A stretch of DNA of 64,000 bases from Selaginella moellendorffii (lineage: Eukaryota; Plantae; Lycopodiophyta), in contig NW_003314268.1 in assembly GCF_000143415.4 (NCBI RefSeq), positions 1,534,672 through 1,598,671 on the forward strand, in the 5' to 3' direction. The translations under genes were made by a program, and so were the position numbers. A model generated the notes under the pieces. It was given only the letters and a program-made list of their open reading frames with translations. It ran no database searches and was not told the DNA's origin. Positions 1,990 through 59,234 of the stretch are shown one piece after another (the stretch's first letter is position 1; each line of letters opens with the position of its first letter).

Positions 1990-3516
1990 CTACCGCCCAA
2001 CCGATGGAGAGCGCATCAAGCGCGGGCTCTCGGGCGGCAAGCTTCCCTCCCTGCTGTTCCTCACCGCGTTCCTGGCCATCCTCGGCGTCCCCGGCGTCGT
2101 GCTCGCGCCATAGCTGGCCCGCAGCTTGGCATCCACCGACGCGCACGTCCTCGCGATGGTTTTGTTGACAAGCCTCTGCGCCGCGTCGGAGAAGTAGCCC
2201 CTGCCCGGGCTCCCCATGGCCGCCCCTCGAGCTGGCGATGGAGTGCTGTAAGGAGCGTGCCGGATCTTCGTCCTCTCGCGGATGTTCCTCGACGCCTCCC
2301 TCGAGAGGCTGTGAGCTCGAGTGTCCCGGACTGGCGGCGCTGGGATCTTGAAGTGAGGACCATCGCCGCTGCCACCAATCCCGACCGGAGTATCCTCCAT
2401 CTCCAGCCTCAGTGGAGTCCCCTCGATCTCTCCCCAAGTCACGAACGGCGAGGAGTCCACTCCTGGAGCTGGCGATGGCGTCGAGACGTAGCTGTATCCC
2501 GCCGTCCCGGCCTTGGGCGGAGGCTTGGCGTTGTCTCCGAGCTGTGGGGTCTTGCGGAGCTCCTCGAGATCATACCTCCTCCGCGCGGCCGGGTCGAGCG
2601 GCGTGGAAGATCCGTGGTGAGCAGGAGTGTAGAGCATCGAGAAGGACTCCTCCTCCGGGAGTTTCGCGTCGAAGATCTTCTCGTGGAAGCGAGTACTACG
2701 CAGGTTGACGGACTTTGGCGGACCGTGGAGGCGTTCTTCCTTCTCGGCCTCGGTGAGCGGAGCGTCGTCCCTTTGAGTCGAATCATACATGAGTAAGTTC
2801 TTGGGCGTGTAGCTCCAGGTATCCAGAGTACTGATCGGCTGGTTGGAAGTTCCATAGCCATCGGTCTGTCGATCCTTGTCGGTCAGCTGGAGCGGCTGCG
2901 TCGACGACGAGATCGCCAAGAACTTAAACTTCTCCTCCCGCCTCCTGTTCACCTTCTCGATGATCTTGGAGAAGCTCTCGTTGTCCTCGCTCGTGTACCG
3001 CCGCATGAACTCGTCCAGAGACACCGAGGTGTTGATCACCGTCCCCTGCTCATCCACCAAGCTCGAAGACGAAGATGGAGCTCCAGCAGTCGTGGATGGA
3101 GTAGCAAATCCTGGCGTTGGCATCACCGACCCTGGAGTAGCGAAAGTTCCTGTGTGGAACAAGGGCGTTCCATCCTTGCCGGACGGCCCAATCCCCCGTA
3201 GCCTCTGGATGATATTGAGCTGGGCCTCCCGCATCAGCACCGGATCACCGCTCCTCACCGCCTCGAGCCACTCGAGCTTGTTCTGGAGCTTGGGGATGTC
3301 CGGGAAGAAATCCCGCTCCACGATCCTCTCGATCGCGGCAACGTACGTGTCCTCGTCCAGCACTGCGTGAGATCGCTTCCTGGGCTTCCGTGGCGGCGGC
3401 GGCCCCATGATCGCCCTACCGGATGTCGTCGCCACGGCTCCATCCAAGCTCTGGACGCTCGGCGATGGAGAGGGGGGCACGATGAGCCGCGGCGAGTGCC
3501 CTGGAGACGCTAGCAT
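1990..3516 (-). CDS. ESS2: Splicing factor ESS2/DGCR14 (Es2) homologue, 508 aa, intronless
   Basis: Family motifs LDEDTYVAAIERIVERDFFPDIPKL, SLDEFMRRYTSEDNESF, KNLLMY, SPFVTWGEIEGTPLRL and FKIP. Confidence 0.92.
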   Translation of the reverse strand: MLASPGHSPRLIVPPSPSPSVQSLDGAVATTSGRAIMGPPPPRKPRKRSHAVLDEDTYVAAIERIVERDFFPDIPKLQNKLEWLEAVRSGDPVLMREAQLNIIQRLRGIGPSGKDGTPLFHTGTFATPGSVMPTPGFATPSTTAGAPSSSSSLVDEQGTVINTSVSLDEFMRRYTSEDNESFSKIIEKVNRRREEKFKFLAISSSTQPLQLTDKDRQTDGYGTSNQPISTLDTWSYTPKNLLMYDSTQRDDAPLTEAEKEERLHGPPKSVNLRSTRFHEKIFDAKLPEEESFSMLYTPAHHGSSTPLDPAARRRYDLEELRKTPQLGDNAKPPPKAGTAGYSYVSTPSPAPGVDSSPFVTWGEIEGTPLRLEMEDTPVGIGGSGDGPHFKIPAPPVRDTRAHSLSREASRNIRERTKIRHAPYSTPSPARGAAMGSPGRGYFSDAAQRLVNKTIARTCASVDAKLRASYGASTTPGTPRMARNAVRNSREGSLPPESPRLMRSPSVGR

Positions 3517-4046
3517 TCTTCCTATCGATCGACCCTAGTTACCTGTGTTCGCGCACAGAGGCAAGAACCCTAAAATCAGAGATCCCAAATTTTAGGGCTC
3601 TAGATATTTAAGTGGACAAAAGGCTAAGGAATCATTGTGCCCTAATTTAACATTAAACAAAAAGTGTAAGCTGTAGTACGGCGTGATTATTCGTAGTATA
3701 TCCGTTGCTTTTTGTTGTACGGTCTTATGTTCGTAAGAAACAAATTTCTTCGCTAAAAGCTCTCTAGAAATCATAGTGTTGCCGCAAGATGGAGCTCTTG
3801 AGTGAAGCTACATACAACTAAAAGCGTGACGACCCTCGATCGATCAACGAGTCTCTCGCACGCCAGTGACAACATCATCTCTCCACGATTGGAATGGACA
3901 TCCCAACGCACGACCCGCTCGTCTCGTCCACGCCACACCACCAGCGATGGCGGCTTCCAAGTCTCAGGCGGAGGGTCCCTTATAAAGCTCCCGGCTCTAA
4001 ACCAGCGAAGAAATCCAGATTCCAGATCCAGCGCCAGAGAGATCTC

Positions 4047-4694
4047 ATGGCGGCTCCGGCAACCAGTGGAAGTTCCAGCCTCCTCATCGCTCCTCCTAAA
4101 GCGGAAGATCGCCAAGAACACGTAGACGAAGATGTCAAGGAGTTTGACGACTTGATCGCTAGATCTCTCGCTAGCGCGCTCCGCGGATCGGCCGACCTCG
4201 CCAACATGCTTCCAACAGGCACGCTGCTTCTCTTCCAGACCTTGGATCCGATCCTCCGGCGAGCTGGGAGCTGCCAGGACAAGACTTTGAGTGCCGCCTT
4301 CCTCATCGTTTGCAGCGTTGTGTGCTTCGTCCTCTCATTCACGGATAGCTTCGAGGCGCCCAATGGGAAAGTCTACTATGGATTCGCGACCTTCCGCGGG
4401 ATGTGGACTCCGCAGATCGAGCAGCCGTGCCCTGGCGTGGATCTCTCCAAGTTTAGGATCACTGTTGGTGATTTCGTCCATGCCTTTCTCACGGTTTATG
4501 TGTTCCTCACGACCAGTGCCTTCTCCACCGATGTTGCGAGTTGCTTCTTCACGGTCCCGGACGAGGTTGTGAGAGCCGCGCCTTCCATCACGGCCTTCCT
4601 CGTGAGTAGTGTGTTCTTGTTATTCCCAACAACGAGACATGGAATTGGATTTCCTGTGAAGCCTCCAAAGACTACCGCATCCTCCAAAGCATGA
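4047..4694 (+). CDS. DMP: DMP (DUF679) membrane protein, copy 1
   Basis: Motifs LANMLPTGTLLLFQ, SFTDSF..NGKVYYGFATFRG, DFVHA, FPTTRHGIG. ATG 4047 is preferred over 3894 because a TATA box (TATAAA) lies at about 3981. Confidence 0.88.
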   Translation: MAAPATSGSSSLLIAPPKAEDRQEHVDEDVKEFDDLIARSLASALRGSADLANMLPTGTLLLFQTLDPILRRAGSCQDKTLSAAFLIVCSVVCFVLSFTDSFEAPNGKVYYGFATFRGMWTPQIEQPCPGVDLSKFRITVGDFVHAFLTVYVFLTTSAFSTDVASCFFTVPDEVVRAAPSITAFLVSSVFLLFPTTRHGIGFPVKPPKTTASSKA

Positions 4695-14068: not shown

Positions 14069-17000
14069 TCAAACTGGCGACGTATGCGAAGTTGGATCCG
14101 ACGAAGAAGTGGGAATCTCCGGGCCGACTCTACACCCCTCGAGCATAAACACCACCTCCGTCATGGCCGGCCTGTCAATAGGATCCGGAGCAGTGCACAG
14201 CAGCGCCACCTTGACGGCCAGCAAAAACTCCTCCCACTCGGCCGACTCTGGATCCAACTCCAGCAAGCTCGGATCAAACAGCTCCGAGATCGGCCCACTC
14301 TGGAGCTGCCGCTTCACCCACTTGACGATATCCTCGTCCTGCGTGAACATCACCGGCCGCCTCCCCGTTAGCAGCTCCAGCAGCACGATCCCAAAGCTGT
14401 AAACGTCCGACTCGCGCGTCAGCTGGCCCGAGACGGTTGCTTCCGGCGAGACGTAGCCGAGCGATCCCAGCGGCGTGGTCGAAGAAGTGGAGGGATCCAT
14501 CGGAGTCACCGCCATGGCCTCGAGGCCAAAGTCCGAGAGGTGTGCCTCAAAGTCGGCGTCGAAGAGGACGTTGCTGGGCTTGACGTCGCCGTGGACGATG
14601 GGAGGCTCCTGCGTGTGGAGGAAGGAGAGGCCCCGAGCTACGCCCAGCGCGATCAAGTGCCGCATCGGCCAGTTGAGGACGTGACCGTCTTGGTGCGACG
14701 CCTCCTGGAGCAGCGCCGCCAGGTTCCCGTTTGGCATGTAGTCGTAGACAAGGAGCTTGACGTCGCCGCGGATGTAGTAGCCGCGCAGCACCGCCAAGTT
14801 CTTGTGTTTAACCCGGCCAACTTTCTCGGCCTCGCTCCGGAACAGGCTCTCCTCGATCACGCCGTCTGGGAGCCGGCGGATCGACAGCACCGTCCCGTCT
14901 TGGAGGCAGGCCTTGAAGACGATCCCGTAGCGCGTCCTGCTCAGGACGTGCTCCTCGTCGAACTGGCCGGTTGCTTCCAGGACGCCCGAGTATGGGATCG
15001 GGCTGTAGAACATGACCAGCTTCTCCTCCGGCTCGGACAGCTCTAGAGGCCGAGGTGCCGCGGAGCGTTTCTTGGCGAGGAGAAGTATCGCGAAGAAGCA
15101 GACGACGGTGACGAGTACCAGGCACAGCACCCCAACTCCTACTGCTATTCCGATCACCGCCTGCTTGCTCAGCCGCAGCATCTTTCGCCTCCTCGGGCAG
15201 TCCTGAAGCGGGGCTCCACACAGCGATGGATTCTCGGCGAAGGAACTCGAGCCGAACTGACTTCCAAGTTCTCCTGGGATGACGCCTTCCAAGCTGTTCC
15301 CAGAGACGTTGAACACTCTGAGGCGAGTGAGGTTTCCGAGTGACTGTGGGATCTTGCCGGTGAGATTGTTGCCGGAGAGATCCAATTCTTGTAGCTGGTT
15401 GAGCATGCCAAGGAGAGAAGGTATGCCACCCGCCAGTGAGTTGTCTTCCAGGTGTAGAAACTCCAAGTTCCTGAGCACGCCTAGCTCGGGAGGAATCGCC
15501 CCGCTAAGTTGGTTACTTCCAGCGTCGAGGCTGCGAAGATCTTTGCATCCGACGACCTCTGCTGGCATGGACCCCGCGATCTTGTTACCATGCACGTCCA
15601 GCTTCTGGAGCTTCGACAGTCTGCCGAGCTCAGGCGGCAAGCTTCCTCGCACGCTCGAGTTCCGGAGCTCTATAGAAACCAGGTTGCTGCAGTTGCCGAT
15701 TTCTGGAGGGATGTCACTCGATAGCAAGTTGTTGGACATCGAAAACGACGTGAGCTGCGCCAGGGAGCCAATGCTGGATGGGATCTGCCCGCTGAGAGTG
15801 TTCCCGCTCACGTTGAGCAGCCGCAGACTCGCCAGATCACCAATTTTGGCTGTAACCGAGCCGTTAAGAAAGTTGTTCGACAGATCCAGCGACTGAAGCC
15901 GCGTGAAACCTGTCAGGCTTTGAGGAATGCCACCGGTAAGCTGCTGGTTGCTAAGATCAAGCACCACCAGCGCCGGAAACTGGCCCCGAACGAATCCTAT
16001 ACTTCCAGAGAGGTTGTTCCGGCTGAAGTCAAGAGCTTGGACCCTGCCCAGCGGCAGGCCCGGTGGTATACTTCCCGAGAAACCATTCCTGCTGAGGTTG
16101 ACCACCTGAAGACTAGAGGACTGTAGCAGCGACGCTGGAAGTTGGCCGCTAAGATTGTTGGCAGCAACAGAAAAGTTCGTGAGCTGCCTCAACGAACTAA
16201 ACTGCACGGAAAGCTCACCCGAAAGTTGGTTCTCGTCGAGCAGCATAACGGTGATAGCGGCGAGATTACCGAACTCGGATGGAACGGGTCCGGTCAAGTT
16301 GTTGCGAGAGAGCGAAAGATGCTGGAGCTGCTGGAGCTGGCCGAGCTGGGCGGGAAGAGACGATGATAACTGGTTTGATTGAAGATCGATGAGTTGGAGG
16401 TTCCTACATTGGCCAAGCCCAGAAGGAATAGATCCGGATAAGCCGTTGAACGAGAGATTGAGCTGCTTCAGCTGGAACAAGTTTCCAAACGAAACAGGAA
16501 TGGAACCTGTAGTTTTGAAATAAAAGACAAGCTTTTAGCACTGGAAGAAAACAAGGAGACGAAAAAAGAAAGAAAGAAAGAAAAAAAAAAAAAAATCGTT
16601 CTCGTACCAGTGATGTTGTTGTTGGCGATCTCGAGTACTTGCACATTGGAGAGGTTGCCGAGACCTTCCGGAAGAAATCCTCCAAGCCTGTTGTTCGAGG
16701 CAGCAAAGGTCTGGAGATTTTTCAAGCGACCCAGCTGCGATGGGAGCTGGCCAGAGAGTGCATTGTTCCCGAGGATCAGCGAGAACAAGCTGCTGCAGTT
16801 GGAGAGAGCCGCAGGGACAGTGCCGCTGAGATCGTTGGAGCCCAGCACGAGACTAGCCAAGAAGAGGAGCTTGCCGAGAGTGTCTGGGATGCTCCCACTT
16901 AATCTGTTCTGCGAGACATCGAGCGAAGATAGTGACGAGCAATTCCCGAGCTGCGAAGGAATCACACCTGTGAGCTGGTTGTTTGACAGGTTGAGCACCC

Positions 17001-23442: not shown

Positions 23443-25336
23443 ATGTCGACGCTATCACTTCGTTGCAGCGTGTTCTCGGAGCCATCGTCTTCCTCCACTC
23501 GCCAAAAGAGGGCTATTTCTTGTGCGTCTTGTTCCAGCTCCGAGAATTCGCGATGCAGGGATAGACGAAGCACGAAATGTAGGCTTGGAGGGCGTGTAGG
23601 AGTAGGATTTAGAGCTGGGAAAGGCGTAGGCGAGCAGCGATGGCTTTTTGCGGGGAGAAGAATTAAAGCGAGGCCGCTGCTTTGTCGAAATTCTTACCAA
23701 AGTAGCAGGACTGCGGCGACCCCATCGGATTATTATCAAGTTCTCGGGGTCAGTAGGAACGCTAGCAAGCAGGAAATCAAAACTTCTTATAGGAAACTCG
23801 CTCGAGAGGTATGATTTTCCTCCTATGCATTTCACAAGCTTGCATTTTGATAACTTTGTTGTTTTTCAGTTTCATCCAGACGTAAACAAGGAGTCCAATG
23901 CGGAAGAAAAGTTCAAGGAGATCACTGCTGCGTACGAGGTAAGAATTGGTCTTTGCATTTCTTTCCATTCGACGAAGATCATTCCCATGTAGGTGCTCTC
24001 GGATGATGAAAAAAGAGCCATTTACGATCAATTTGGTGAAGATGGTCTAAAGGGAGGAGGTCCAACTTTCACGGTAAGACACAAACATTTCGATTGATAG
24101 AGATGATCTAGAGTTTGTTTGTGTGTGCAGGATAGTCCATTCGATATTTTTGACTCGTTTTTTGGAGGTCGAAGCGGATTTGGAAGGCGCAGAGGCACTG
24201 ATAATTGGTCTGGAGTTCAAGGAAACGATCTCAGGTATGATCCAACTTGCAAAAAGCTCTTCTGTCGTTTTTCTCTTTTGGATTTTATTCTTTTTATCGT
24301 GACAATGTGTGTGTGTCTCTTCTGCAGCTACGATCTGAGCCTTGACTTCAAAGAAGCGGTTTTTGGAGTGGAAAAACAGTTTGACATATGGCATTTGGAA
24401 AGCTGCGAGGCATGTAGCGGAACTGGCGCCAGAAGTAAGAGCAGAAAGAAATGCCGAGTCTGTGGAGGAATGGGTGAAGTTATGCGAACACAAGAAACAG
24501 CCTTTGGGATGTTCTCACAGGTTAGCGATTCGTCGATAACGTTTGTTTTGTTGGCTCACATTGTTTTTCTCTCTCTCAGGTGTCTACTTGTACAAACTGT
24601 GGTGGCGAGGGTGAAGTGATTTCCGATCACTGCAGAAAATGTGGAGGCAAAGGAGGTATTCGAGCGAAAAAAACGATCAAACTAAGTGTTCCATGTGGAG
24701 TTGACAGCGGGAGCACTCTCCGTGTTGCTGGTGGAGGAGATGCTGGAGAAAGAGGGTGAGCTTAAATCTTGTGCTTGTTCTATATAGTTTCTTTGTGACT
24801 GACTGTGCCCTCTCTCAGTGGTCCATCTGGGGATCTCTACGTCAATCTTAAAATCAGAGACATGCCTGGAATTCGAAGAGACGGCATCAATCTTTACTCC
24901 GAGATCTCTGTGAGCTATACGGAATGTATACTCGGGACAACGAAAAAGGTATGTTTCGCTGTTCTCTCGTATCTTAGTCGCATAAAACACAACTCTGACA
25001 GGTGAAGACGCTGGAAGGATTCTCGGATCTTCGTATTCCTGCGGGAACTCAACCAGGGGCATGTATAACTCTTCCGAAGATTGGTGTTCCAAGGCTTCGA
25101 AAGCCATCACTTCGAGGGGATCACATTTTCTCCGTCAAAGTCTTACTTCCAACCAAAGTCAGGTGGGACTTTAGCAAAACTTTCTTCCTTGTTCTTCTTC
25201 GTAAAACCTTATCTTTTTCTTCTTCTACAGTGCCGCTGAGAAAGAACTCGTGGAAGAACTGGCTCGTCTCGAGAAAGGCGCTCAATCCAGGCAAAGAAAA
25301 TCCCAAAACTCCAAGAGTGAAGCTAGTACGTGGTGA
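23443..25336 (+). CDS. Plastid-targeted type I DnaJ (Hsp40; DJA4-7 class), multi-exon
   Basis: Ser/Arg-rich transit peptide; J domain DYYQVLGV...KLARE|FHPDVNK; G/F region; CxxCxGxG repeats (CEACSGTG, CRVCGGMG, CTNCGGEG, CRKCGGKG); C-terminal GDLYV and IPAGTQPG; stop TGA at 25334-25336. Confidence 0.92.
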
Positions 25337-25563
25337 TCAAACACATGGTTTGTCTATAAAACATTGGCAAGTGTAAGCGTGTGTCCATCCCCCATGTGAA
25401 AGCCAACAGTGGAGATTGAATCGAGTTCTACCATCCTATCTGCCGAAAGAGCTGTGTAAGGATTCCTTTGTTCGTCTGGCAATGGCTCTGACGAAACAAT
25501 CTTGGTACTTTTGGCTACATTCCTAGGATCTCACAAATTTGGCGAGGGAATCATCACTGTCCT
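24845..25563 (+). repeat. Left copy of ~720-bp direct duplication (intact DnaJ 3' end + decayed BAP31-like 5' end)
   Basis: Collinear with 41678-42423. 25482-25563 (ATGGCTCTG...GCTACATTCCTAGGATCTCACAAATTTGGCGAGGGAATC) is a deleted copy of the BAP31-like start. Confidence 0.9.
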
Positions 25564-28874: not shown

Positions 28875-30640
28875 TTAGAAGTTCCGCCTTGGCTTGAGTA
28901 TGACAGGCATGCCGTGCTTTGGGATCAGGGGTCCTGTAATGACTGGGTGGTGCCGGTAATTTGGAGACAATTTAACCTCGAATCTCTGAAGGATGTTAGC
29001 AATGATTACTTTGCACTGCACCTCAGAGAACGCCCTTCCAATGCAGGTTCGAACTCCATAGGCAAATGGCATGAACGCCATGGGATGCTTGGCTGCAGTT
29101 GCTGTACCATTCTTGAAGCGGGATGGGTTGAATTCATTTACATCATCTCCCCACAGCTCTCGGTCATGATGCAGCGCAACAACATTAACGCTCACCCCCA
29201 GTCCTTTGGGAATGAACACGTCCCCCAGCATAGTGTCTTTAATGCACACCCTTGTGATGAGCGGCATTGTGGGATACAGCCTCAATGTCTCTTGCAGAAT
29301 CATCTCAATCTGCACAAACAAGAACCATACAGCAAGCTCAGTTATGTGGATCAAAGGACAAATCTGATTAACTGGTTACCGTGGTTAGCTTGCTGACATC
29401 TTTGGGACTAACAACTTCTCCATCCAGAACTTGGTCAACTTCTTGTCTTGCCTTCTCTTGCCAACTGGGATGGAGAGCCAGCATCAACATTGTGAATGAG
29501 AGAAGTGGGGCCAAGCTGATAAACCCTGTAGCATAGAGTGTTTTCAACTCGGCAACAATCACGTCTTCTCTAACATCTGGCTTATCCAAGAGTTTCCCAA
29601 TAAAATCAACGTTATTGCCTTCTGTCGTCTTCTTTCTTTGCTCTCTCACTTGCTTACGAACAAGGTCATTTAGCTGTTTCCGTACTTTCCACCGCTCAAC
29701 GTTTATACCGAAGGGGATTAGCCTGCACCACAATATCTTCCGTAAGTCAGTACAGTTGATATGCTTTTTCCTTAAGCCACCTGTACCTGGCAAATGGTAA
29801 CCAGCTCCAGGTCTCTTGATCATCTTGCAGCTTGAGCAATGTGATGTTATACTTGAGAATGTTCTGAAAGTCATTGTTTTTCAACCCCAGTGTTGTCCTC
29901 GCTACAACATCCACATTCAAGCACATGAACTCAACTTGAACATCCAGCTCCCTCTCCACGTCTCCACTGTCCTTCACAAAGGCTTCCCATTTTGCCATGA
30001 CTTGGCTTGTTGCATTGTTCACAGCTCCAACCATTGCCTGTGCAATAGAGTTCAGTCAACCTTAGACTTTGATTTTGTTAATGCAGTATCACCTTGACTT
30101 CGTCAATGTAGTATCTGGGCGCTACAATTTGTCTCTGCCTGGCCCAAGCTTCTCCATTTGCATGGAAGAGGCCCTTATGAAAGATATCATCAGAAAAGAC
30201 TTTGATGAAGTGGGACTTGACGAAATCCTTGTGCTTCTTCATAAACAGATCCCATATCATCTTGGGCTCTGAGATCACAATCCGGGGCTCCCGCAGCCAC
30301 CAGTTCAAGTGTACGTTCCCTGAAAATCAAAGTGAATTTGAAAGCACACGAATAATGTTGTGAAATTAAATTGAAGCCCACCATAGAATTTGATGTTCTG
30401 TGCGGCCCAGGGAAGAACATGAGGCAGAATATCGTGGCTGATCTCCTTCATGTCAGGCTTCCCATACAAAACATCAAAGATGGGATTCGGAGGATTGGGT
30501 GAGCCTCGTATGCCTTGCTTCTCCATCACTGGACGGAGAGCACTGGCCACCCAATAGTAGCGCATGAGGAAGCTGCACACCATCCATAGAACAGACAATG
30601 CAAGCACGAGTGCGACAAGAAGAACCGAGATGACATCCAT
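28875..30640 (-). CDS. Cytochrome P450, CYP72 clan, 504 aa, intact
   Basis: Exons 30640-30382, 30319-30093, 30037-29787, 29722-29380, 29309-28875 give 1515 nt in frame (5-exon layout typical of the CYP72 clan). N-terminal TM, KQGIRG, HDILPHVLP, WARQR, WQEKARQEV, ETLRLYP, FNPSRF, heme motif FMPFAYGVRTCIG. Confidence 0.93.
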
Positions 30641-30681
30641 TATTGGTGAGGCAGAGCTGAGACGAGGGCCGTAGAGAATTT

Positions 30682-31279
30682 ATACACCAGCAAGTATTCA
30701 CAGAGCTGCCCCATGAGACGACCTTGAAAGCACGAGCCTAAGATCTTTGTGCTTGATAAGACTACTCAAGGCGGTTGTAGTTCAACAAGTGAAGTCTTTT
30801 ACAGGCAGTGTTCCTAGGCGCGAAACGACCATTACGGAAAGACACGGCTCAGAGTGACAATAACAGCGACGGGCATGCTGCAAAAGCTACTCCTTTATTT
30901 GTCCTTACACAGATTCTCCTTCAAGAAACATCCTTCCTGGTTGAAGACTGTCTGGCGGGGAGGAACGTTTTTGAATCAGTACGGACTGTTTTCATGCAGC
31001 ACCTGTTTACGAATTACACGCCATGACTTTCGATCACTCACTTTATTACGGACCACCCATTCGGGTCGAGATGGCGACCCGAATGGCTGGCTATAGGACG
31101 ATCTATCCGGTGACCATGGATTCGGGCTTGACGTGTCTGAAAGTTCCCAAACACTATGATGGACGTTGTTTCACTCTGGTCTCGAAGATCTTGCAAGATA
31201 CACCAGCAAGTATTCACAGAGCTGCCCACGAGACCAGCCAGTCATAGAGAATGAGACCTTAAAAGCACTAGCCTAGAGA
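30682..31279 (+). repeat. Duplicated ~60-80 bp element in the P450/CCR divergent promoter (30682-30743 and 31198-31279)
   Basis: ATACACCAGCAAGTATTCACAGAGCTGCCC..GAGAC..GACCTT.AAAGCAC.AGCCTA occurs twice. Confidence 0.85.
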
Positions 31280-31531
31280 GATTCCGGGTCCTCCCATGGT
31301 CCGGGTCGACCCCCGATTCTGTCAGGCCCCCTCCAAAGCTCAGCTAAATCTTCTTGCGCCTTTTTTATTTGACCTTCCAAGTTACAGGAGTAGAAACAAC
31401 GTATCCGAGTGTATCTGATCTCCCACCACGTTTGGCCTTCACGAAACACTCCAGGAACGTCCTTCAAAGACTGACCCAAATTTTCAGGTCTTATAAATAG
31501 AAATGTTGAGAGTAAACACCAGAAGTGAGGG

Positions 31532-32521
31532 ATGATGGCTCAGTTGCGAGGGATGATGGTTTGTGTCACTGGAGCATCGGGTTTCATTGGATCCTGGATT
31601 GTCAAATACCTCCTTGACAAAGGCTATACTGTACGTGGAGCAGTCCGAGATCCAGAGGATTTGCACAAGGTGGAACACCTCAAAAATCTCAAGGGGGCCA
31701 ACCAGAGGCTGGAGCTCGTAAAAGCTGATTTGCTCGACAATAGCCTAGTCGCGGCAACTGCAGGTTGCCAAGTTGTGATCCACACGGCATGCCGCTGTCC
31801 AGAGGCGAATTTCCGAATCACTAATCCGCAGACCGAGCTGATCGAGCCTTCAGTGAAAGGCACACTCAACGTCCTGAAAGCCAGCTTCAGTTCTGGAGTT
31901 TCCACTGTTGTGATGACGTCCTCGGTGGGTGCCATGTATTTGGATCCAACTCGGCCTCTGGAGCAGACAGTGGATGAATCATGCTGGAGCGATGTGGAGT
32001 ACCTTGTCCAGATCAAGGAGTGGTACTGCCTGGCGAAGACTCTGGCTGAAAAATCCGCATGGGAGTTCGCTGCTGCCCAAGGCAATGGTATCAAACTGAT
32101 TGTGATCAACCCAGGAGTCGTGATGGGTCCAGTTCTTCAGGCCAAGCTGAATGCGAGCAGCACCCACATTCTCAAGTATCTGACCGGATGCGTGAAGAGC
32201 TACGCAAATCGCTGCCAGGCATATGTGGACGTGAGGGATGTGGCACTGGCTCATGTTGCGGCTTTCGAAGATCCAAAAGCATTTGGGAGGTATTTTCTGG
32301 CAGAGAGATCGATCCACAGGGCGAGGCTTGTGGAAATGCTGGCAGAGCTGTACCCGCAGCTCCCAGTTCCTAAAATCTGCTCGGACACCAAAAATCCTGA
32401 AGCCGTTCCACACAAGATATGCAATGCCAAAGCCCGTCAATTGCTGGAATCAGAGCTGATAAACATTGGGAAGTGTCTGTTTGATTCAGTGGAGAGCTTC
32501 AAAGAGAAGGGATTTCTGTAA
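31532..32521 (+). CDS. Cinnamoyl-CoA reductase-clade NADPH-dependent reductase (extended SDR), intronless, 329 aa
   Basis: VCVTGASGFIGSWIV, TSSVGAMY, DESCWSD, EWYCLAK (YxxxK), NASSTHILKYLTG..KSYAN..QAYVDVRDVALAH; TATA box at about 31492. Confidence 0.92.
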   Translation: MMAQLRGMMVCVTGASGFIGSWIVKYLLDKGYTVRGAVRDPEDLHKVEHLKNLKGANQRLELVKADLLDNSLVAATAGCQVVIHTACRCPEANFRITNPQTELIEPSVKGTLNVLKASFSSGVSTVVMTSSVGAMYLDPTRPLEQTVDESCWSDVEYLVQIKEWYCLAKTLAEKSAWEFAAAQGNGIKLIVINPGVVMGPVLQAKLNASSTHILKYLTGCVKSYANRCQAYVDVRDVALAHVAAFEDPKAFGRYFLAERSIHRARLVEMLAELYPQLPVPKICSDTKNPEAVPHKICNAKARQLLESELINIGKCLFDSVESFKEKGFL

Positions 32522-32958
32522 GCAATTGAATAATAATATAAAATAAATGTTTTAATTCAATGAATTTGAAACAAGTTATTGAAAAAAAAATTAGACTACA
32601 AATAAATTCAGTATTTATTTATTTATTTAAGAAAAAAAAAAAAGACTTCAAAAAGTTGTCTCATACTTAAGTCTTTGGATTTGGACTTGTCCATGGATCG
32701 ATTTCAAAGTAGAACTTCCGAAACAGAAACAGAAGATTCAACAATTGTCTGGAAATGCAAACAATGTGTGGTATGTCACCTTCTGTGATGGAAGAGTCTC
32801 ATGGTTCCACTGGTCAAAATCTAGTTCTCTATCGCTATAAAAAGCGTAGAATTTGCTCACTTGTTTGTAGAGCTCCATTTGATTTTATAGTGCTCCCTGA
32901 AAGTTTCACAATCCACCTGTGGCACGCTGTTTCATCTTCACCATTCACCTCGGATTTC

Positions 32959-34098
32959 ATGGCTGCGTTTGCTCCTGGTGAAGAGCTCGTCCTCTATGCT
33001 ACTATCCCCCTCGCTCTCAATGCGGTGGTGAAGCTGGGAGCCTTGGACGAGATAGCAGATTCGGTCCTCTCTGCTTCTGAGATTGTTTCCCGGATTACAA
33101 ACAACCCATCTGCGAATGTTGCGTTTCTGGACAGAACTCTCCGAGTTCTGGCAACTTACGGGGTTGTGAACGAGACCGTTGTGCAGGGGGAGCGCAAGTA
33201 TGGGCTCTCCGAGATAGGCAAGCGTTTTTCTCCAGGAACGAAATTGGCAGCGCGTGGTTTGAGTGTCATGTGCAATCACCGGATCTTCCTCAAGCCTTTC
33301 GAGCATCTTGCCGAAGGCATTCTTGATGGTGGCGAGCCATTCCGCAAAGCCCACGGCAAAACCGCATACGAGCTTGTCGCTGAGGAGCCGGAATTCAACA
33401 ACAGCTTCAACCTCTGCATGGCCGATCATTCCAAGAGGTCCAGTGCTGTGCTGCTGGATTGCTACAAGGGGTTTGCAAGCATCAAAACTCTGGTCGATGT
33501 TGGTGGCGGGAATGGAGCATTGCTGTGTGACATTCGAACTCGCTATCCGCATATCAAAGGCATAAATTTCGATCAGCCCCATGTTGTTTCTCAGGGAATT
33601 GCATCTGAAGGTATCCTCTCACAGATTTTTCATGCTCGATCATTCAAGCACTCTTTGTTTACTTCTTCCAGGAGTGGAGCATGCTGGTGGCGACATGTTC
33701 GGATCAATTCCCCAAGGAGATTCAATCATGTTGAAGGTAAAGGATCCAGAAACAAATTCTCCTTGCCAATCTGTTGTTTCATTCCTTTCTAGTGGATTCT
33801 CCACAACTGGAACGACGAACAGTGCCTGAAGATCCTGCAAAACTGCTACAAATCCCTTCCTGCTCAGGGAGGGAAAGTCATTGTCGTGGAAGTTTTACTA
33901 CCTTCTGAAGCTTATCAAGCTGCCAGTGAGTTTGAGCTGCGAATCGGACTGCTCCTAGATCTTGTCATGATGGTTAATTTCAACGGCAAGGAGCGGACCT
34001 TTGAAGAGTACCAGGCGCTCGCCGAACAAGCTGGTTTCAACAAAGTGCATCTTGTCAACGTCTCCAATGGACTAGCAATTCTGGAGTTTCACAAGTAG
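32959..34098 (+). CDS. SAM-dependent O-methyltransferase (COMT-like), 340 aa
   Basis: Exons 32959-33610, 33672-33736, 33793-34098 give 1023 nt in frame. Dimerisation domain LDRTLRVLA; LVDVGGGNG, INFDQPHVV, GGDMF, KWILHNW, GKERT; TATAAAA at about 32835. Confidence 0.92.
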
Positions 34099-41677: not shown

Positions 41678-42423
41678 AATCTAAGAATATTCCGGGATTT
41701 AAGGTGGCTCTGAGATCTCTATGAGCTAAGTATATACTTAAGACTACATAAAAAGTATGTTTCACTGTTCTATGTGTTTTATTGTATCTTAGTCACATAA
41801 AACATAACTCAGAATTTTCAGTTCTTGATATCCCTAAGGGGTGTGTATAACTCTACTGAAGATTGGTGTTACAAGGCTTCCAAAACCATCACTTCAAGGG
41901 GATCACATTTTTCCATCAAAGTTTCCTCCCAACCAAAGTCAAAGTGGGACTTCAGCAAAACTTTCATAAAGCCTTTTTTTCTTTACTTCTTCTTCTACAG
42001 TGATGCCAAGAAAGAATTCGTGGAACAACTGGCTCATCTGGAGAAAGGCACTCATTCCAGGCAAGAAAAATCCCAAAACTCTAAGAGTGAAGCTACATGG
42101 TGATCAAACACATGGTTTGATTATAAAATCAAGTTTGTTCTTACAACAAAGTATTTGACGTGTAAGCGCGTGTCCCTCCCCCGTGTGACGACAACCCCAC
42201 GGTGGAGATTGAATCGCGCACGGGAGTTCTCCATCCTAGCCGTCGAAAGCGTTGTGTAAAAGCACTCTTATTTCCTCTCTGGCGTTCTAGGGTCTTTATC
42301 TCGTCTAGTGATGGCTCTGGAGTGGGGAGCTCTGGCTCTCGTCGTCGCCGCCGAAGGAATCTTGTTACTCTTCGCTACATTCCCAGGATCTCACAAATTT
42401 GTCAAGGGAATCGTCGCCGTCCT
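41678..42423 (+). repeat. Right copy of the direct duplication (decayed DnaJ 3' end + intact BAP31-like 5' end)
   Basis: Collinear with 24845-25563; includes degenerate DnaJ terminal exon DAKKEFVEQLAHLEKG..SQNSKSEATW*. Confidence 0.9.
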
Positions 42424-53550: not shown

Positions 53551-54978
53551 ATGGCGCTGGAGTCTTCCAGGATCACAGTGACCAACATTTGCTTGGTTTC
53601 TCCAAGTTACAGCCCGGAGAATGTCGATCTGTTGGAGAGGAAGAAGCAAATGCGTCTCTGTGCTGCTTCTCATATGATTTGGTTCGTGCCTTACAGGACT
53701 CGCCTTCTCTTCTTCCGAAAGCCTCCTCCCCATCTCTCCTTCGGGGCCATTGTAGCAAATCTCAAGAGTTCTCTTGCCAAGGCGCTGGTGGAGTTTTATC
53801 CCCTGGCAGGGAGATTGCTTGTGAGTGACAGCGAGAATGGACTCCGGATGGATGTGGTTTGCAATGACAAAGGCGTGCTCTTCATTGAAGCCAGTGCTAC
53901 TGGAGTTACTGTTGAGGAGCTCGCAAAGGATGAAGTGAGTGGTCATTTCGAGGGGATTCCAGCAAAACTAGTGGAAGATCTGGCACAATGTGGAGACTAC
54001 GATATATTGACAATTCCATGGTCCTTCGATGCTCCTCTGTTCATCATCCAGGTACTTCAATATATATCCGCATTGATAATCAAGTCGAATCGTATGTAGG
54101 TGACAGAGCTTTCTTGTGGAGGCATTTGCATCTCCATCAAGTTCAATCACCAGCTTTTAGATGGAGCTGGGACCTGGAACTTTGTCAAGTCATGGGCCGA
54201 GGTCTGTTGTGGTAAATCTATGTCACTCAAGCCCGTGGTCGTGGAAACTCCACCATGCATTGCGGTCTCGGACGATCATCCCACAGATTTTGAGCTTCGA
54301 GCAGGGTTTGAAAGGGTCTGCAACGCGGATTTACTGAAAGTAAGCACCAAGTCAACATCGCAGTCCGCGGAGTATGACATGAAGTGCTTTGCATTCAAGA
54401 AGGAGATGATCCAAAAGATGAAGCTCGAGAATCCAGGGTTCAGCTCGTTCCAGCTTCTCACGAGTTTCATATGGTCCAGAGTTAACGCTGCGAGAGATCT
54501 CAAGGATGACGAAACCACTACTCTTTTATTTGCAGCAAACTGTAGAGGACGGATCAAGACTGTGCCGAAGGGATTCGTAGGAATGGCCGTGGTGTATGAT
54601 CACGTTTCCACCAAAGTCTCGAGCCTACGAGCTGAGGGAAATGAGCTGAGAAATGGGGCGGATCTTCTCAAGAAAAAGATCGGTGATTTGCTCACGGAGG
54701 AAGGCGCGGGTCTCTACTCAAAGGTTGTGAGCAGTGGCGACAGGGGCTTCACAGCTTTTCCTCAATCTAAGAGGGAAACAGCATTGATCGTTGGAAGTTC
54801 GTTCTACTTCCCGGTTTTCGAGGACTTTGGATTTGGAAAGCCGGTTGGAATGACGCTGGTTCGTCCTTCTGAGGATAGCAAGCTATACTATTTCCCAGGG
54901 AAGGAGGAAGGTGATGTGGTAGCATATATTGGGCTCACAAGTCACGCGATGAGAAAGCTTAGTTTTCCACAGGTTTGA
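53551..54978 (+). CDS. BAHD acyltransferase, copy 1 (459 aa)
   Basis: Exons 53551-54051 and 54100-54978, with a 48-bp intron at the conserved Q position. LKSSLAKALVEFYPLAGRL, HxxxD as NHQLLDG, DFGFG. Confidence 0.93.
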
Positions 54979-57806: not shown

Positions 57807-59234
57807 ATGGCGCTGGAGTCTTCCAGGATCACAGTAACCAACATTTGCTTGGTTTCTCCAAGTTACAGCCCGGAGAATGTCGATCTGTTGGAGAGGAAGA
57901 AGCAAATGCGTCTCTGTGCTGCTTCTCATATGATTTGGTTCGTGCCTTACAGGACTCGCCTTCTCTTCTTCCGAAAGCCTCCTCCCCATCTCTCCTTCGA
58001 GGCCATTGTAGCAAATCTCAAGAGTTCTCTTGCCAAGGCGCTGGTGGAGTTTTATCCCCTGGCAGGGAGATTGCTTGTGAGTGACAGCGAGAATGGACTC
58101 CGGATGGATGTGGTTTGCAATGACAAAGGCGTGCTCTTCATTGAAGCCAGTGCTACTGGAGTTACTGTTGAGGAGCTCGCAAAGGATGAAGTGAGTGGTC
58201 ATTTCGAGGGGATTCCAGCAAAACTAGTGGAAGATCTGGCACAATGTGGAGACTACGATATATCGACAATTCCATGGTCCTTCGATGCTCCTCTGTTCAT
58301 CATCCAGGTACTTCAATATATATCCGCATTGATAATCAAGTCGAATCGTATGTAGGTGACAGAGCTTTCTTGTGGAGGCATTTGCATCTCCGTCAAGTTC
58401 AATCACCAGCTTTTAGATGGAGCTGGGACCTGGAACTTTGTCAAGTCATGGGCCGAGGTCTGTTGTGGTAAATCTATGTCACTCAAGCCCGTGGTCGTGG
58501 AAACTCCACCATGCATTGCGGTCTCGGACGATCATCCCACAGATTTTGAGCTTCCAGCAGGATTTGAAAGGGTCTGCAACGCGGATTTACTGAAATTAAG
58601 CACCAAGTCAACATCGCAGTCCGCGGAGTATGACATGAAGTGCTTTGCATTCAAGAAGGAGATGATCCAAAAGATGAAGCTCGAGAATCCAGGGTTCAGC
58701 TCGTTCCAGCTTCTCACGAGTTTCATATGGTCCAGAGTTAACGCTGCGAGAGATCTCAAGGATGACGAAACCACTACTGTTGTATTCGCGGCGAACTGTA
58801 GAGGACGGATCAAGACTGTGCCGAAGGGATTCGTAGGAATGGCCGTGGTGTATGATCACGTTTCCACCAAAGTCTCGAGCCTACGAGCTGAGGGAAATGA
58901 GCTGAGAAACGGGGCGGATCTTCTCAAGAAAAAGATCGGTGATTTGCTCACGGAGGAAGGCGTGGGTCTCTACTCAAAGGTTGTGAGCAGTGGCGACAGG
59001 GGCTTCACCGCTTTTCCTCAATCTAAGAGGGAAACAGCATTGATCGTTGGAAGTTCGTTCTACTTCCCGGTTTTCGAGGACTTTGGATTTGGAAAGGCGG
59101 TTGGAATGACGCTGGTTCGTCCTTCTGAGGATGGCAGGCTATACTATTTCCCAGGGAAGGAGGAAGGTGATGTGGTAGCATATATTGGGCTCACAAGTCA
59201 CGCGATGAGAAAGCTTAGTTTTCCACAGGTTTGA
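57807..59234 (+). CDS. BAHD acyltransferase, copy 2 (459 aa)
   Basis: Exons 57807-58307 and 58356-59234; same motifs as copy 1, with 11 amino-acid differences. Confidence 0.93.

What the first reader, a model, noticed from the sequence alone, without database searches (positions are those of the whole stretch)
28875..34098. Candidate specialised-metabolism gene cluster: CYP72-clan P450 + CCR-clade reductase + O-methyltransferase in 5.2 kb
Seen in the sequence: three intact, non-homologous enzyme genes sit side by side with no gene between them. The P450 and reductase are head-to-head across ~890 bp, and the OMT starts ~440 bp after the reductase. All three lie in an accessory island otherwise filled with decayed transposons. 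Established: acyl-CoA reduction, P450 oxidation and O-methylation are sequential steps in phenylpropanoid-type pathways, and a divergently transcribed P450/OMT pair (F5H/COMT) is known in Selaginella. This P450 belongs to a different clan, so this is not that locus. Inference: a co-regulated mini-pathway making a methylated, reduced aromatic product, possibly acylated by the two BAHDs 19-24 kb downstream.
Basis: partly seen in the sequence, partly recalled or inferred. Interest (0 to 1): 0.85.

Follow-up and report, generated by a model that had tools for sequence, protein, structure and literature searches.

The report
Spikemoss P450–CCR–methyltransferase gene trio
Three intact, transcribed enzyme genes (a divergent P450, the already characterised reductase SmCCR2, and an unusual O-methyltransferase) sit side by side in the Selaginella moellendorffii reference genome; they are a reasonable but unproven candidate for a small phenolic-metabolism pathway.

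Summary
Window 22959-44098 is 100% identical to S. moellendorffii scaffold GL377572.1. At 28875-34098 there are three intact genes with no gene between them. One is a 5-exon, 504-aa CYP72-clan-like P450 on the minus strand. One is an intronless 328/329-aa cinnamoyl-CoA reductase of the SmCCR2 group; the near-identical SmCCR2-1 is reported active in vitro. One is a 3-exon, 340-aa COMT-family O-methyltransferase (OMT). Spliced RNA contigs confirm all six introns and show transcripts of all three genes in one sample.

The trio is not the known SmF5H/SmCOMT locus. That locus was fetched: its P450 has a CYP71-type heme motif, and its OMT is 44% identical to this one.

The trio lies in a 17-21 kb segment that occurs at least three times in the assembly, twice in tandem on GL377695.1.

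Between copies the OMT is under purifying selection (dN/dS 0.08). The P450 is not clearly constrained (0.57) and lacks the canonical I-helix acid-alcohol pair. Each gene appears to have its own promoter.

Co-regulation and a shared product remain untested. Nothing links the two intact BAHD acyltransferase genes downstream. A rough estimate suggests chance adjacency is plausible.

Verdict: a real, ordinary-looking candidate cluster of moderate interest. The scan noted the same kind of trio on another piece of this genome (s1-405371).

The parts
28875..30640 (-). P450 gene, 504 aa. Exons are 30640-30382, 30319-30093, 30037-29787, 29722-29380 and 29309-28875 (stop included). Introns are 62, 55, 64 and 70 nt.
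   Evidence: Pfam p450 on the exon translations. An open frame with GT..AG introns was built. All four joints are present in spliced contigs of run X1, which have 0 mismatches over the coding part. The gene is annotated as a 504-aa p450 in GL377572.1. ExxR, PxRF and FxxGxRxCxG motifs are present. The I-helix reads TGFISL where relatives have AGxET(T/S).
30641..31531 (.). Divergent P450/CCR intergenic region of 891 bp. It holds a perfect 30-nt direct repeat (30682-30711 and 31198-31227) that marks an internal duplication of about 500 bp.
   Evidence: the repeat finder families D1, D6 and D7. The same spacer is 611 bp in the GL377695.1 copies. By megablast only about 170 bp next to the P450 and about 60 bp next to the CCR align between copies. 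No AC/MYB lignin-type elements were found.
31532..32521 (+). Intronless cinnamoyl-CoA reductase of the SmCCR2 group. It is 329 aa from 31532; the annotated 328-aa form starts at 31535. EWYCL motif is at 32018-32032 and the H-X-X-K motif (HILK) at 32165-32176.
   Evidence: Exact match to P0393, in the same 90% cluster as 'cinnamoyl-CoA reductase2-1' ARC76938.1. It is 50-55% identical to bona fide CCR1s. Best solved structures are Petunia, Medicago and Sorghum CCRs at E 1e-95 to 1e-100, against DFR at 1e-73. A colinear RNA contig covers 31547-32518 with 0 mismatches. In vitro activity of SmCCR2-1 is reported by Chao et al. 2017, as cited in PMC12044727.
32522..32958 (.). CCR-OMT spacer of 437 bp. 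It carries AATAAA signals, an A-run about 60 nt after the CCR stop (duplicated 50 nt further on in this copy only), and a TATA-like box at about 32836 ahead of the OMT.
   Evidence: Sequence read. Repeat family D2. Comparison with L001 and L002. An RNA contig of run X2 begins at 32890 with adapter sequence before it.
32959..34098 (+). COMT-family O-methyltransferase gene, 340 aa. Exons are 32959-33610, 33672-33736 and 33793-34098 (stop included). Introns are 61 and 56 nt.
   Evidence: Pfam Methyltransf_2 + Dimerisation. The translation equals P0395 exactly. Both joints are seen in raw RNA reads (X23, X24) and in contigs (X1, X2). SAM-binding VDVGGGNG, the catalytic His (in LHNW) and two Glu are present. 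dN/dS is 0.08-0.20 between copies.
24897..25459 (+). Left copy of an old direct repeat (3' part of the DnaJ gene) that brackets the 16.8-kb segment holding the trio.
   Evidence: blastn of the window against itself gives 71% identity over 611 nt, with blocks at 85-89%. The DnaJ gene is annotated at window 23443-25336.
41708..42259 (+). Right, decayed copy of the same direct repeat.
53551..54978 (+). BAHD acyltransferase 1, intact, with one 48-nt intron at 54052-54099. No evidence links it to the trio.
   Evidence: Pfam Transferase on both ORF halves. A GT..AG intron spans the apparent stop; HQLLD and DFGFG motifs are present.
57807..59234 (+). BAHD acyltransferase 2, a tandem copy (97.5% identical over 1.86 kb by megablast), with its intron at 58308-58355.

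Best explanation
This is the SmCCR2 locus of the Selaginella moellendorffii reference genome. Three individually functional, separately transcribed enzyme genes are packed into 5.2 kb and inherited together as part of a 17-21 kb segmentally duplicated unit. Mechanism of each part: (1) The reductase uses NADPH to reduce hydroxycinnamoyl-CoA thioesters to hydroxycinnamaldehydes. This is shown in vitro in the literature for the near-identical SmCCR2-1, and inferred here from 97.6% identity and conserved motifs. (2) The OMT transfers a methyl group from SAM to a phenolic hydroxyl. This is inferred from family membership and conserved SAM-binding and catalytic residues; the substrate is unknown because the protein sits on a very long private branch. 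(3) The P450 is a heme-thiolate enzyme of a private CYP72-clan lineage with an atypical oxygen-activation motif; its substrate and even its reaction type are unknown. My best reading of the adjacency: it is real and heritable, but on present evidence it is somewhat more likely to be incidental than a dedicated three-step pathway. Contributing factors would be a gene-dense genome, an intronless CCR copy that landed between a divergent P450/OMT pair, and later segmental duplication. A functional coupling of CCR2 with the OMT (an aldehyde-level phenylpropanoid side branch) is the most plausible pathway reading and is listed as a rival.
For: Identity of the locus. Intact genes, confirmed introns and transcripts of all three in one sample. 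CCR identity and activity. OMT family, residues and purifying selection. P450 clan, motif deviation and weak constraint. Segmental duplication of the whole unit, junk DNA included. Separate promoters and a poorly conserved divergent spacer. Contig depths differ 5- to 13-fold between genes, and the dominant OMT transcript comes from another copy. The closest Diphasiastrum homologues of the CCR and the OMT lie on different chromosome records (CM055114.1, CM055097.1) with no called neighbour within 10 kb. The nearest P450 relatives carry locus tags of two further chromosomes (07G, 13G) and were not fetched. The rough chance expectation for such trios is not negligible once the post hoc choice of families is allowed for.
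Against: CCR and COMT-type OMTs act around the same aldehyde-level steps of phenylpropanoid metabolism, and direct adjacency of these two small families is expected only about 0.04 times per genome by chance (family sizes partly from memory). The same species has a proven head-to-head P450/COMT cluster. The OMT and P450 are lineage-specific and fast-evolving, as is typical of specialised metabolism. Transcripts of all three were detectable in each of the four RNA data sets laid. These points keep a true pathway cluster well alive.
Confidence: 0.5

Rival explanations
1. Dedicated three-enzyme pathway. CCR2 makes a hydroxycinnamaldehyde, the CYP72-clan P450 hydroxylates or otherwise oxidises it or a derivative, and the OMT methylates the new hydroxyl. 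This would be a second phenylpropanoid cluster in Selaginella, assembled independently of SmF5H/SmCOMT.
For: There are three different enzyme classes with no gene between them. The P450 and OMT lie on opposite strands, flanking the CCR, which recalls the head-to-head P450/OMT layout of the SmF5H/SmCOMT locus. All three transcripts are present in the same samples. All known copies keep all three reading frames open.
Against: Characterised CYP72-clan enzymes are not known as phenylpropanoid ring hydroxylases (my own knowledge). The P450 lacks the canonical I-helix acid-alcohol pair. Its dN/dS of 0.57 does not differ significantly from neutral (p=0.08). The divergent promoter is not conserved between copies. 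Expression levels are unequal.
Confidence: 0.22
2. Two-gene module: CCR2 and the co-oriented OMT 437 bp downstream work in one phenylpropanoid side branch (aldehyde formation plus O-methylation), and the P450 is a bystander.
For: Adjacency of these two small families is unlikely by chance (about 0.04 expected). The OMT is under strong purifying selection. Its closest characterised relative is the phenylpropanoid aldehyde/alcohol OMT SmCOMT. The P450 shows weak constraint.
Against: The OMT is only 44% identical to SmCOMT, lies on a branch of about 1 substitution per site, and is not its sister in the tree. COMT-family enzymes at this distance methylate flavonoids, stilbenes, coumarins or alkaloids (PDB hit list). 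The OMT has its own TATA-like promoter. Contig depth differs 2- to 13-fold from the CCR.
Confidence: 0.18
3. Extended cluster that includes the two BAHD acyltransferases 19-24 kb downstream, giving an acylated product.
For: Both BAHD genes are intact, with HxxxD and DFGxG motifs.
Against: About 19 kb separates the OMT from the first BAHD gene, including a Bap31-like ORF, a C48-peptidase gene and the boundary of the duplicated unit. The BAHDs are not part of the unit that is duplicated with the trio on GL377695.1. Their expression was not examined.
Confidence: 0.04
4. One or more of the genes, especially the P450, is decaying, so the 'cluster' is a relic.
For: P450 dN/dS is 0.57 and not significantly below 1. 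The I-helix motif is non-canonical. RefSeq models of the paralogous copies are shorter, at 475 and 483 aa.
Against: The frame is open in all three copies. The heme-binding Cys, ExxR and PxRF are intact. The gene is correctly spliced and transcribed, with contigs identical to this copy. The odd I-helix is shared by all copies, so it predates their divergence.
Confidence: 0.1

Closest known systems
SmF5H (CYP788A1) / SmCOMT two-gene cluster of S. moellendorffii (Weng et al. 2011, as summarised in PMC8416159)
   Same: Same species. A P450 and a COMT-family OMT on opposite strands within a few kb. Phenylpropanoid context. The OMT here has the solved S. moellendorffii COMT (PDB 9WAM = P0415) as its best structural-database and best full-length hit.
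   Different: It is a different locus: GL377568.1 versus GL377572.1. The P450 there has the CYP71-clan-type PFGSGRRMCPG motif and is only 28% identical over the C-terminal 178 aa. The OMTs are 44% identical and not sisters. Here a CCR gene lies between the P450 and the OMT. There is no biochemical evidence for this P450 or OMT.
Bona fide plant cinnamoyl-CoA reductases (Petunia CCR1 4R1S, Medicago CCR2 4R1U, Sorghum CCR1 5TQM); SmCCR2-1 (Chao et al. 2017)
   Same: 50-55% identity to CCR1s, E 1e-95 to 1e-100 to solved CCRs, a YxxxK catalytic motif, the H-X-X-K substrate motif, and a GxxGxxG NADPH fold. It is 97.6% identical to the SmCCR2-1 entry.
   Different: The signature reads EWYCL instead of NWYCY. 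There is a 7-residue insertion after the HTA(S/C) strand relative to Petunia CCR1. The gene has no introns, whereas the closest Diphasiastrum homologue has 6 exons.
Computationally defined plant biosynthetic gene clusters (plantiSMASH-type)
   Same: Three or more adjacent genes of different biosynthetic enzyme classes.
   Different: Only three genes, with no scaffold-forming signature enzyme and no demonstrated co-expression or product. plantiSMASH itself could not be run here.
CYP72-clan P450s (CYP72A, CYP734A, CYP735A, CYP709B)
   Same: The nearest named relatives all carry these names. The heme motif is FxxGxRxC(I/V)G, not the A-type CPG.
   Different: Only 29-37% identity to the nearest relatives, which by my knowledge of the usual 40% rule would make it a family of its own. 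The I-helix reads TGFISL instead of AGxET(T/S).

Membership tests
Genuine cinnamoyl-CoA reductase (CCR) | SDR Rossmann fold with a GxxGxxG NADPH site and a Ser-Tyr-Lys catalytic triad (YxxxK) | tested here: met
   Pfam Epimerase/3Beta_HSD/NAD_binding. GASGFIG at aa 13, TSS at aa 128, and Y-C-L-A-K within EWYCLAK at aa 162-168. Aligned to Petunia CCR1 over the full length.
Genuine cinnamoyl-CoA reductase (CCR) | NWYCY signature motif | tested here: not met
   It reads EWYCL. The literature reports that SmCCR2-1, with this same variant, is nevertheless an active CCR (PMC12044727, PMC12693918).
Genuine cinnamoyl-CoA reductase (CCR) | H-X-X-K substrate-binding motif (CCR-SBM) | tested here: met
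   HILK at aa 211-214, aligned with HILK of Petunia CCR1.
Genuine cinnamoyl-CoA reductase (CCR) | Reduction of hydroxycinnamoyl-CoA esters in vitro | not testable with these tools
   Reported for SmCCR2-1 by Chao et al. 2017 as cited in PMC12044727. The original paper is not held. The window protein is 97.6% identical to that entry.
COMT-type (class II) plant O-methyltransferase | Dimerisation domain plus a Methyltransf_2 domain with the SAM-binding VDVGGGxG motif | tested here: met
   Pfam PF08100 + PF00891. VDVGGGNG at aa 179 and GGDMF at aa 223.
COMT-type (class II) plant O-methyltransferase | Catalytic His with two supporting Glu (His269/Glu297/Glu329 of alfalfa COMT; numbering from my own knowledge) | tested here: met
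   His in LHNW (aa 243), Glu in VVEVLLP and Glu in GKERT align with the corresponding residues of solved COMTs. The Asp that follows the His in COMTs is Asn here.
SmCOMT orthologue / SmF5H-SmCOMT locus | Near-identity to the S. moellendorffii COMT and adjacency to the CYP788A1-type P450 | tested here: not met
   44% identity to P0415 (= PDB 9WAM sequence). Different scaffold. The neighbouring P450 is of another clan. The tree does not place the two OMTs as sisters.
CYP72-clan cytochrome P450 | P450 fold with ExxR, PxRF and a heme-binding FxxGxRxCxG | tested here: met
   Pfam p450. The motifs ETLR, FNPSRF and FAYGVRTCIG were aligned with relatives.
CYP72-clan cytochrome P450 | Phylogenetic grouping with CYP72/709/714/721/734/735 families | tested here: inconclusive
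   All nearest hits that carry CYP-type names have CYP72-clan names, at 29-37% full-length identity. No formal clan-level tree with outgroups was built.
CYP72-clan cytochrome P450 | Canonical I-helix oxygen-activation motif (A/G)Gx(D/E)T(T/S) | tested here: not met
   It reads TGFISL in all three copies, whereas most aligned relatives read AGHETT or similar.
Plant biosynthetic gene cluster | Three or more adjacent non-homologous biosynthetic genes | tested here: met
   P450, SDR reductase and OMT lie within 5.2 kb with no intervening gene call.
Plant biosynthetic gene cluster | Co-expression of the members | tested here: inconclusive
   Transcripts of all three appear in all four RNA data sets laid. 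There were only 11-17 raw reads in X23 and X24. Contig depths are not comparable, and reads from several paralogous copies are mixed.
Plant biosynthetic gene cluster | Members act in one pathway to one product | not testable with these tools
   Needs enzyme assays or reconstitution.

The most novel reading that the evidence does not exclude
An intronless (possibly retroposed) CCR copy was captured between a divergently transcribed P450/OMT pair. This created a self-contained aldehyde-level phenylpropanoid module in which a CYP72-clan P450 with a non-canonical I-helix performs the ring oxidation. That would be a further independent recruitment of a P450 for this chemistry, after CYP84 in angiosperms and CYP788 in Selaginella, and an example of cluster assembly by retroposition followed by copy-number amplification.
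Probability: 0.07. Interest if true: 0.8.

Novelty: new member of a known kind. Interest (0 to 1): 0.4.

Why it matters
Selaginella is the textbook case of convergent lignin chemistry, and its only validated gene cluster is SmF5H/SmCOMT. A second physically linked set would give a directly testable handle on lycophyte-specific phenolic chemistry (lignans, selaginellin-type or methylated phenolics). It joins a proven CCR with a private, selectively constrained OMT and a private P450. It would also bear on how plant clusters assemble in a compact genome. If the adjacency is incidental, the locus is still a useful caution: in a genome this gene-dense, three 'biosynthetic' neighbours are not in themselves evidence of a pathway.

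Tried and rejected
1. Exact-protein look-ups of the 329-aa reductase and of P0001 found nothing. Look-ups via the OMT proteins succeeded.
2. The primary papers are not held (Weng et al. 2011; Chao et al. 2017). Their content is cited only through papers that are held, or marked as my own knowledge.
3. Hypothesis 'the OMT is SmCOMT and the P450 is SmF5H': rejected by fetching that locus.
4. Hypothesis 'the OMT is the sister paralogue of SmCOMT': not supported. The tree gives an unresolved polytomy and a branch length of 1.03.
5. Lignin-type AC/MYB promoter elements: none in either spacer. There are also none in the SmF5H-SmCOMT spacer, so the test is uninformative.
6. Retrogene signature for the CCR. 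It has no introns, against 6 exons in Diphasiastrum, and an AATAAA followed by an A8-A10 run about 60 nt after the stop in all copies. No convincing target-site duplication was found. This is kept as a possibility, not a finding.
7. Transposon domains in flanking ORFs: none found by Pfam.
8. The BAHD 'in-frame stop' was considered a pseudogene mark. It was rejected because it lies in a 48-nt GT..AG intron at the conserved position after the IQ residues.
9. Ranking genes by contig depth as a co-expression test was abandoned. The tool warns against it, and the reads come from several copies.
10. The first call of the look-up of sequencing runs failed because the server was busy and was repeated.

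Full report
WHERE THE WINDOW COMES FROM. The reductase, OMT and P450 translations are 95.6-99% identical to Selaginella moellendorffii proteins. A 21,140-bp locus fetched from the reference assembly (GCA_000143415.2, scaffold GL377572.1, 1,557,630-1,578,769) is 100% identical to window 22959-44098. The window is therefore reference-genome DNA, and the three genes are already annotated there: p450 of 504 aa, epimerase-family protein of 328 aa, and OMT of 340 aa.

THE OBSERVATION. The ORF list, Pfam scan and sequence reading gave gene models. I checked them by requiring an open frame with GT..AG introns and against public RNA data.
- P450, minus strand: exons 30640-30382, 30319-30093, 30037-29787, 29722-29380, 29309-28875; 504 aa.
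- Reductase, plus strand: 31532 (annotated start 31535) to 32521, no intron.
- OMT, plus strand: exons 32959-33610, 33672-33736, 33793-34098; 340 aa.
In run X1 the contigs lack all four P450 introns and both OMT introns, so X1 is RNA. The P450 and reductase contigs match the window without a single mismatch over coding sequence. Raw RNA reads of X23 and X24 also show the first OMT junction, and single X24 reads show the second OMT junction and one P450 junction.

THE REDUCTASE. It belongs to the same 90% cluster as GenBank ARC76938.1, 'cinnamoyl-CoA reductase2-1 [S. moellendorffii]' (97.6% identity).
- Two held papers state that SmCCR2-1, whose NWYCY signature reads EWYCL, was verified as a genuine CCR in vitro by Chao et al. 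2017.
- The window protein has EWYCL at aa 162, the H-X-X-K motif as HILK at aa 211, and a GxxGxxG site.
- It aligns over its full length with solved CCRs at E 1e-95 to 1e-100, against 1e-73 for DFR.
- The gene has no intron. The closest Diphasiastrum homologue (55% identity) has six exons.
- All copies carry AATAAA and an A8-A10 run about 60 nt after the stop.
This fits a retroposed origin, but I found no target-site duplication, so it stays an inference.

THE OMT. It is a COMT-family enzyme with the SAM-binding motif, the catalytic His and both Glu. The Asp that follows the His in COMTs is Asn here.
- Its best full-length hit outside its own copies is a 353-aa S. moellendorffii 'caffeic acid O-methyltransferase' (P0415, 44% identity). 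That sequence is the one in PDB entry 9WAM.
- I fetched that gene. It lies head-to-head with a 521-aa P450 carrying the CYP71-clan-type motif PFGSGRRMCPG. This matches the published SmF5H/SmCOMT cluster.
- In a maximum-likelihood tree, the window OMT and its copies sit on a branch of 1.03 substitutions per site in an unresolved polytomy. They are not sister to P0415. No substrate can be inferred by homology.
- Between copies it is under purifying selection: dN/dS is 0.08-0.20, with 8 synonymous against 2 non-synonymous changes and p = 3e-4 against neutrality.

THE P450. A full-library HMMER search with the last exon found one near-identical protein and then nothing above about 52%.
- The nearest relatives that carry CYP-type names are called CYP72A15, CYP734A1, cytokinin hydroxylase (CYP735A), CYP709B2 or 11-oxo-beta-amyrin 30-oxidase (CYP72A154). 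All are CYP72-clan names.
- Full-length identity to these relatives is only 29-37%.
- ExxR, PxRF and the heme-binding Cys are intact. The I-helix motif that relatives have as AGHETT reads TGFISL in all copies. The acid of the acid-alcohol pair is Ile and the Thr is Ser.
- Between copies there are 27 non-synonymous and 13 synonymous differences. dN/dS is 0.57, not significantly below neutral (p = 0.08).
The gene is expressed and correctly spliced, so I do not call it a pseudogene. It is the weakest member of any pathway model.

COPIES AND CONTEXT. On scaffold GL377695.1 the whole trio occurs twice in tandem, 21.4 kb apart, with identical OMT and reductase proteins. A fourth OMT copy lies at the very start of GL377572.1.
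- The alignable unit includes non-coding flanks and a DnaJ C-terminal fragment.
- In the window the 16.8-kb segment holding the trio is bracketed by an old direct repeat of the DnaJ 3' part: 24897-25459 and 41708-42259, 71% identity. This confirms earlier scan note s1-380690.
- Synonymous divergence from the GL377695.1 copies is 0.03-0.04 for the P450 and OMT and 0.009 for the reductase.
- Co-duplication therefore reflects segmental duplication of everything in the unit. It is not evidence of selection on linkage.
- The P450/CCR spacer is 891 bp here and 611 bp in the other copies. It contains an internal duplication of about 500 bp marked by a perfect 30-nt repeat. By megablast it aligns between copies only close to each start codon.
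- The OMT has its own TATA-like box, and an RNA contig starts at 32890.
- Neighbours are ordinary genes (LRR kinase, MCM, DnaJ upstream; a Bap31-like ORF and a C48 peptidase downstream), followed by two intact tandem BAHD genes.
- I found no transposon domains in the flanking ORFs scanned, so 'accessory island of decayed transposons' is not verified.

EXPRESSION. Transcripts of all three genes are present in each of the four data sets laid.
- In the two raw-read RNA-seq runs they are rare: 11 and 17 reads among 9.2 million records read.
- Contig depths in X1 are about 40 (P450), 15 (CCR) and 200 (OMT).
- The abundant OMT contig carries 10 of 10 variants of the GL377695.1 copy, not of the window copy.
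- A second P450 variant set matches neither fetched paralogue, so at least one more copy is expressed.
- The data show transcription and correct splicing. They cannot test co-regulation.

CONSERVATION. The closest Diphasiastrum complanatum homologues of the CCR and OMT were fetched. They lie on different chromosome records and have no called neighbour within 10 kb. The nearest Diphasiastrum P450 relatives carry locus tags of two further chromosomes (07G, 13G) and were not fetched. No closer orthologues of the OMT or P450 from other species appeared in any search. The arrangement is therefore lineage-specific as far as these databases show.

CHANCE. I assumed about 22,300 genes, 18 OMTs, 22 CCR/DFR-type genes and 225 P450s per haploid genome. 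The OMT count is derived from PMC7789564; the other numbers are from memory. An OMT next to a CCR-family gene is then expected about 0.04 times per genome, and this exact trio about 0.001 times. The families were chosen after the fact, however. If some 3% of genes belong to families that a reader would call phenylpropanoid-related, about 0.3-0.6 such triples are expected by chance. The scan read thousands of windows of this genome.

JUDGEMENT.
- Shown: three intact, transcribed, adjacent genes; the identity of the CCR; the locus is distinct from SmF5H/SmCOMT; duplication as a unit; constraint on the OMT.
- Inferred: SAM-dependent phenol O-methylation by the OMT; an oxidative role for the P450; possible retroposed origin of the CCR.
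- Not shown: co-regulation, a common substrate chain, or any link to the BAHDs.
I put about 0.5 on incidental adjacency of individually functional genes. I put about 0.2 on a full three-step pathway and about 0.2 on a CCR2-OMT module with the P450 as bystander. My literature searches found no description of this trio as a cluster. The scan's own notes list the same kind of trio on another piece of this genome (s1-405371), presumably one of the paralogous copies.

Noticed in passing
window 53551-54978 and 57807-59234: Two tandem BAHD acyltransferase genes (about 97% identical). Each looks interrupted by an in-frame stop, but the stop lies inside a 48-nt GT..AG intron at the conserved position after '...FIIQ'. 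Both genes are intact, with HQLLD and DFGFG motifs.
   Followed up: yes
window 30682-30711 and 31198-31227: A perfect 30-nt direct repeat marks an internal duplication of about 500 bp in the P450/CCR divergent spacer. It is specific to this copy: the spacer is 891 bp here and 611 bp on GL377695.1.
   Followed up: partly
window 24897-25459 and 41708-42259: An old direct repeat (71% identity) of the 3' part of the DnaJ gene brackets the 16.8-kb segment that holds the trio. It probably marks the boundary of the tandemly duplicating unit.
   Followed up: partly
L002 20674-20874 (GL377695.1, downstream of the second trio copy): A 66-aa gene call with a Cu-oxidase_3 (laccase-type) domain lies about 9.5 kb beyond the OMT of the second tandem copy, near the edge of the fetched locus. 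It may be a fragment.
   Followed up: no
window 29569-29671 and 30431-30547 (RNA variants in runs X1, X2, X24): A set of P450 transcript variants matches neither the window copy nor the two GL377695.1 copies. At least one further expressed P450 copy or allele therefore exists that I did not fetch.
   Followed up: partly
window 32581-32652: A 22-nt A-rich unit after the CCR stop is tandemly duplicated 50 nt apart in this copy only. An A8-A10 run about 60 nt after the stop, preceded by AATAAA, is shared by all CCR copies and could be a remnant of a retrocopy poly(A) tail.
   Followed up: partly
window 14069-16480 (minus), 1990-3516 (minus), 3894-4694 (plus): Ordinary genes upstream: an LRR receptor-like kinase (803-aa ORF), an Es2 nuclear protein and a DUF679 protein.
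   Followed up: no
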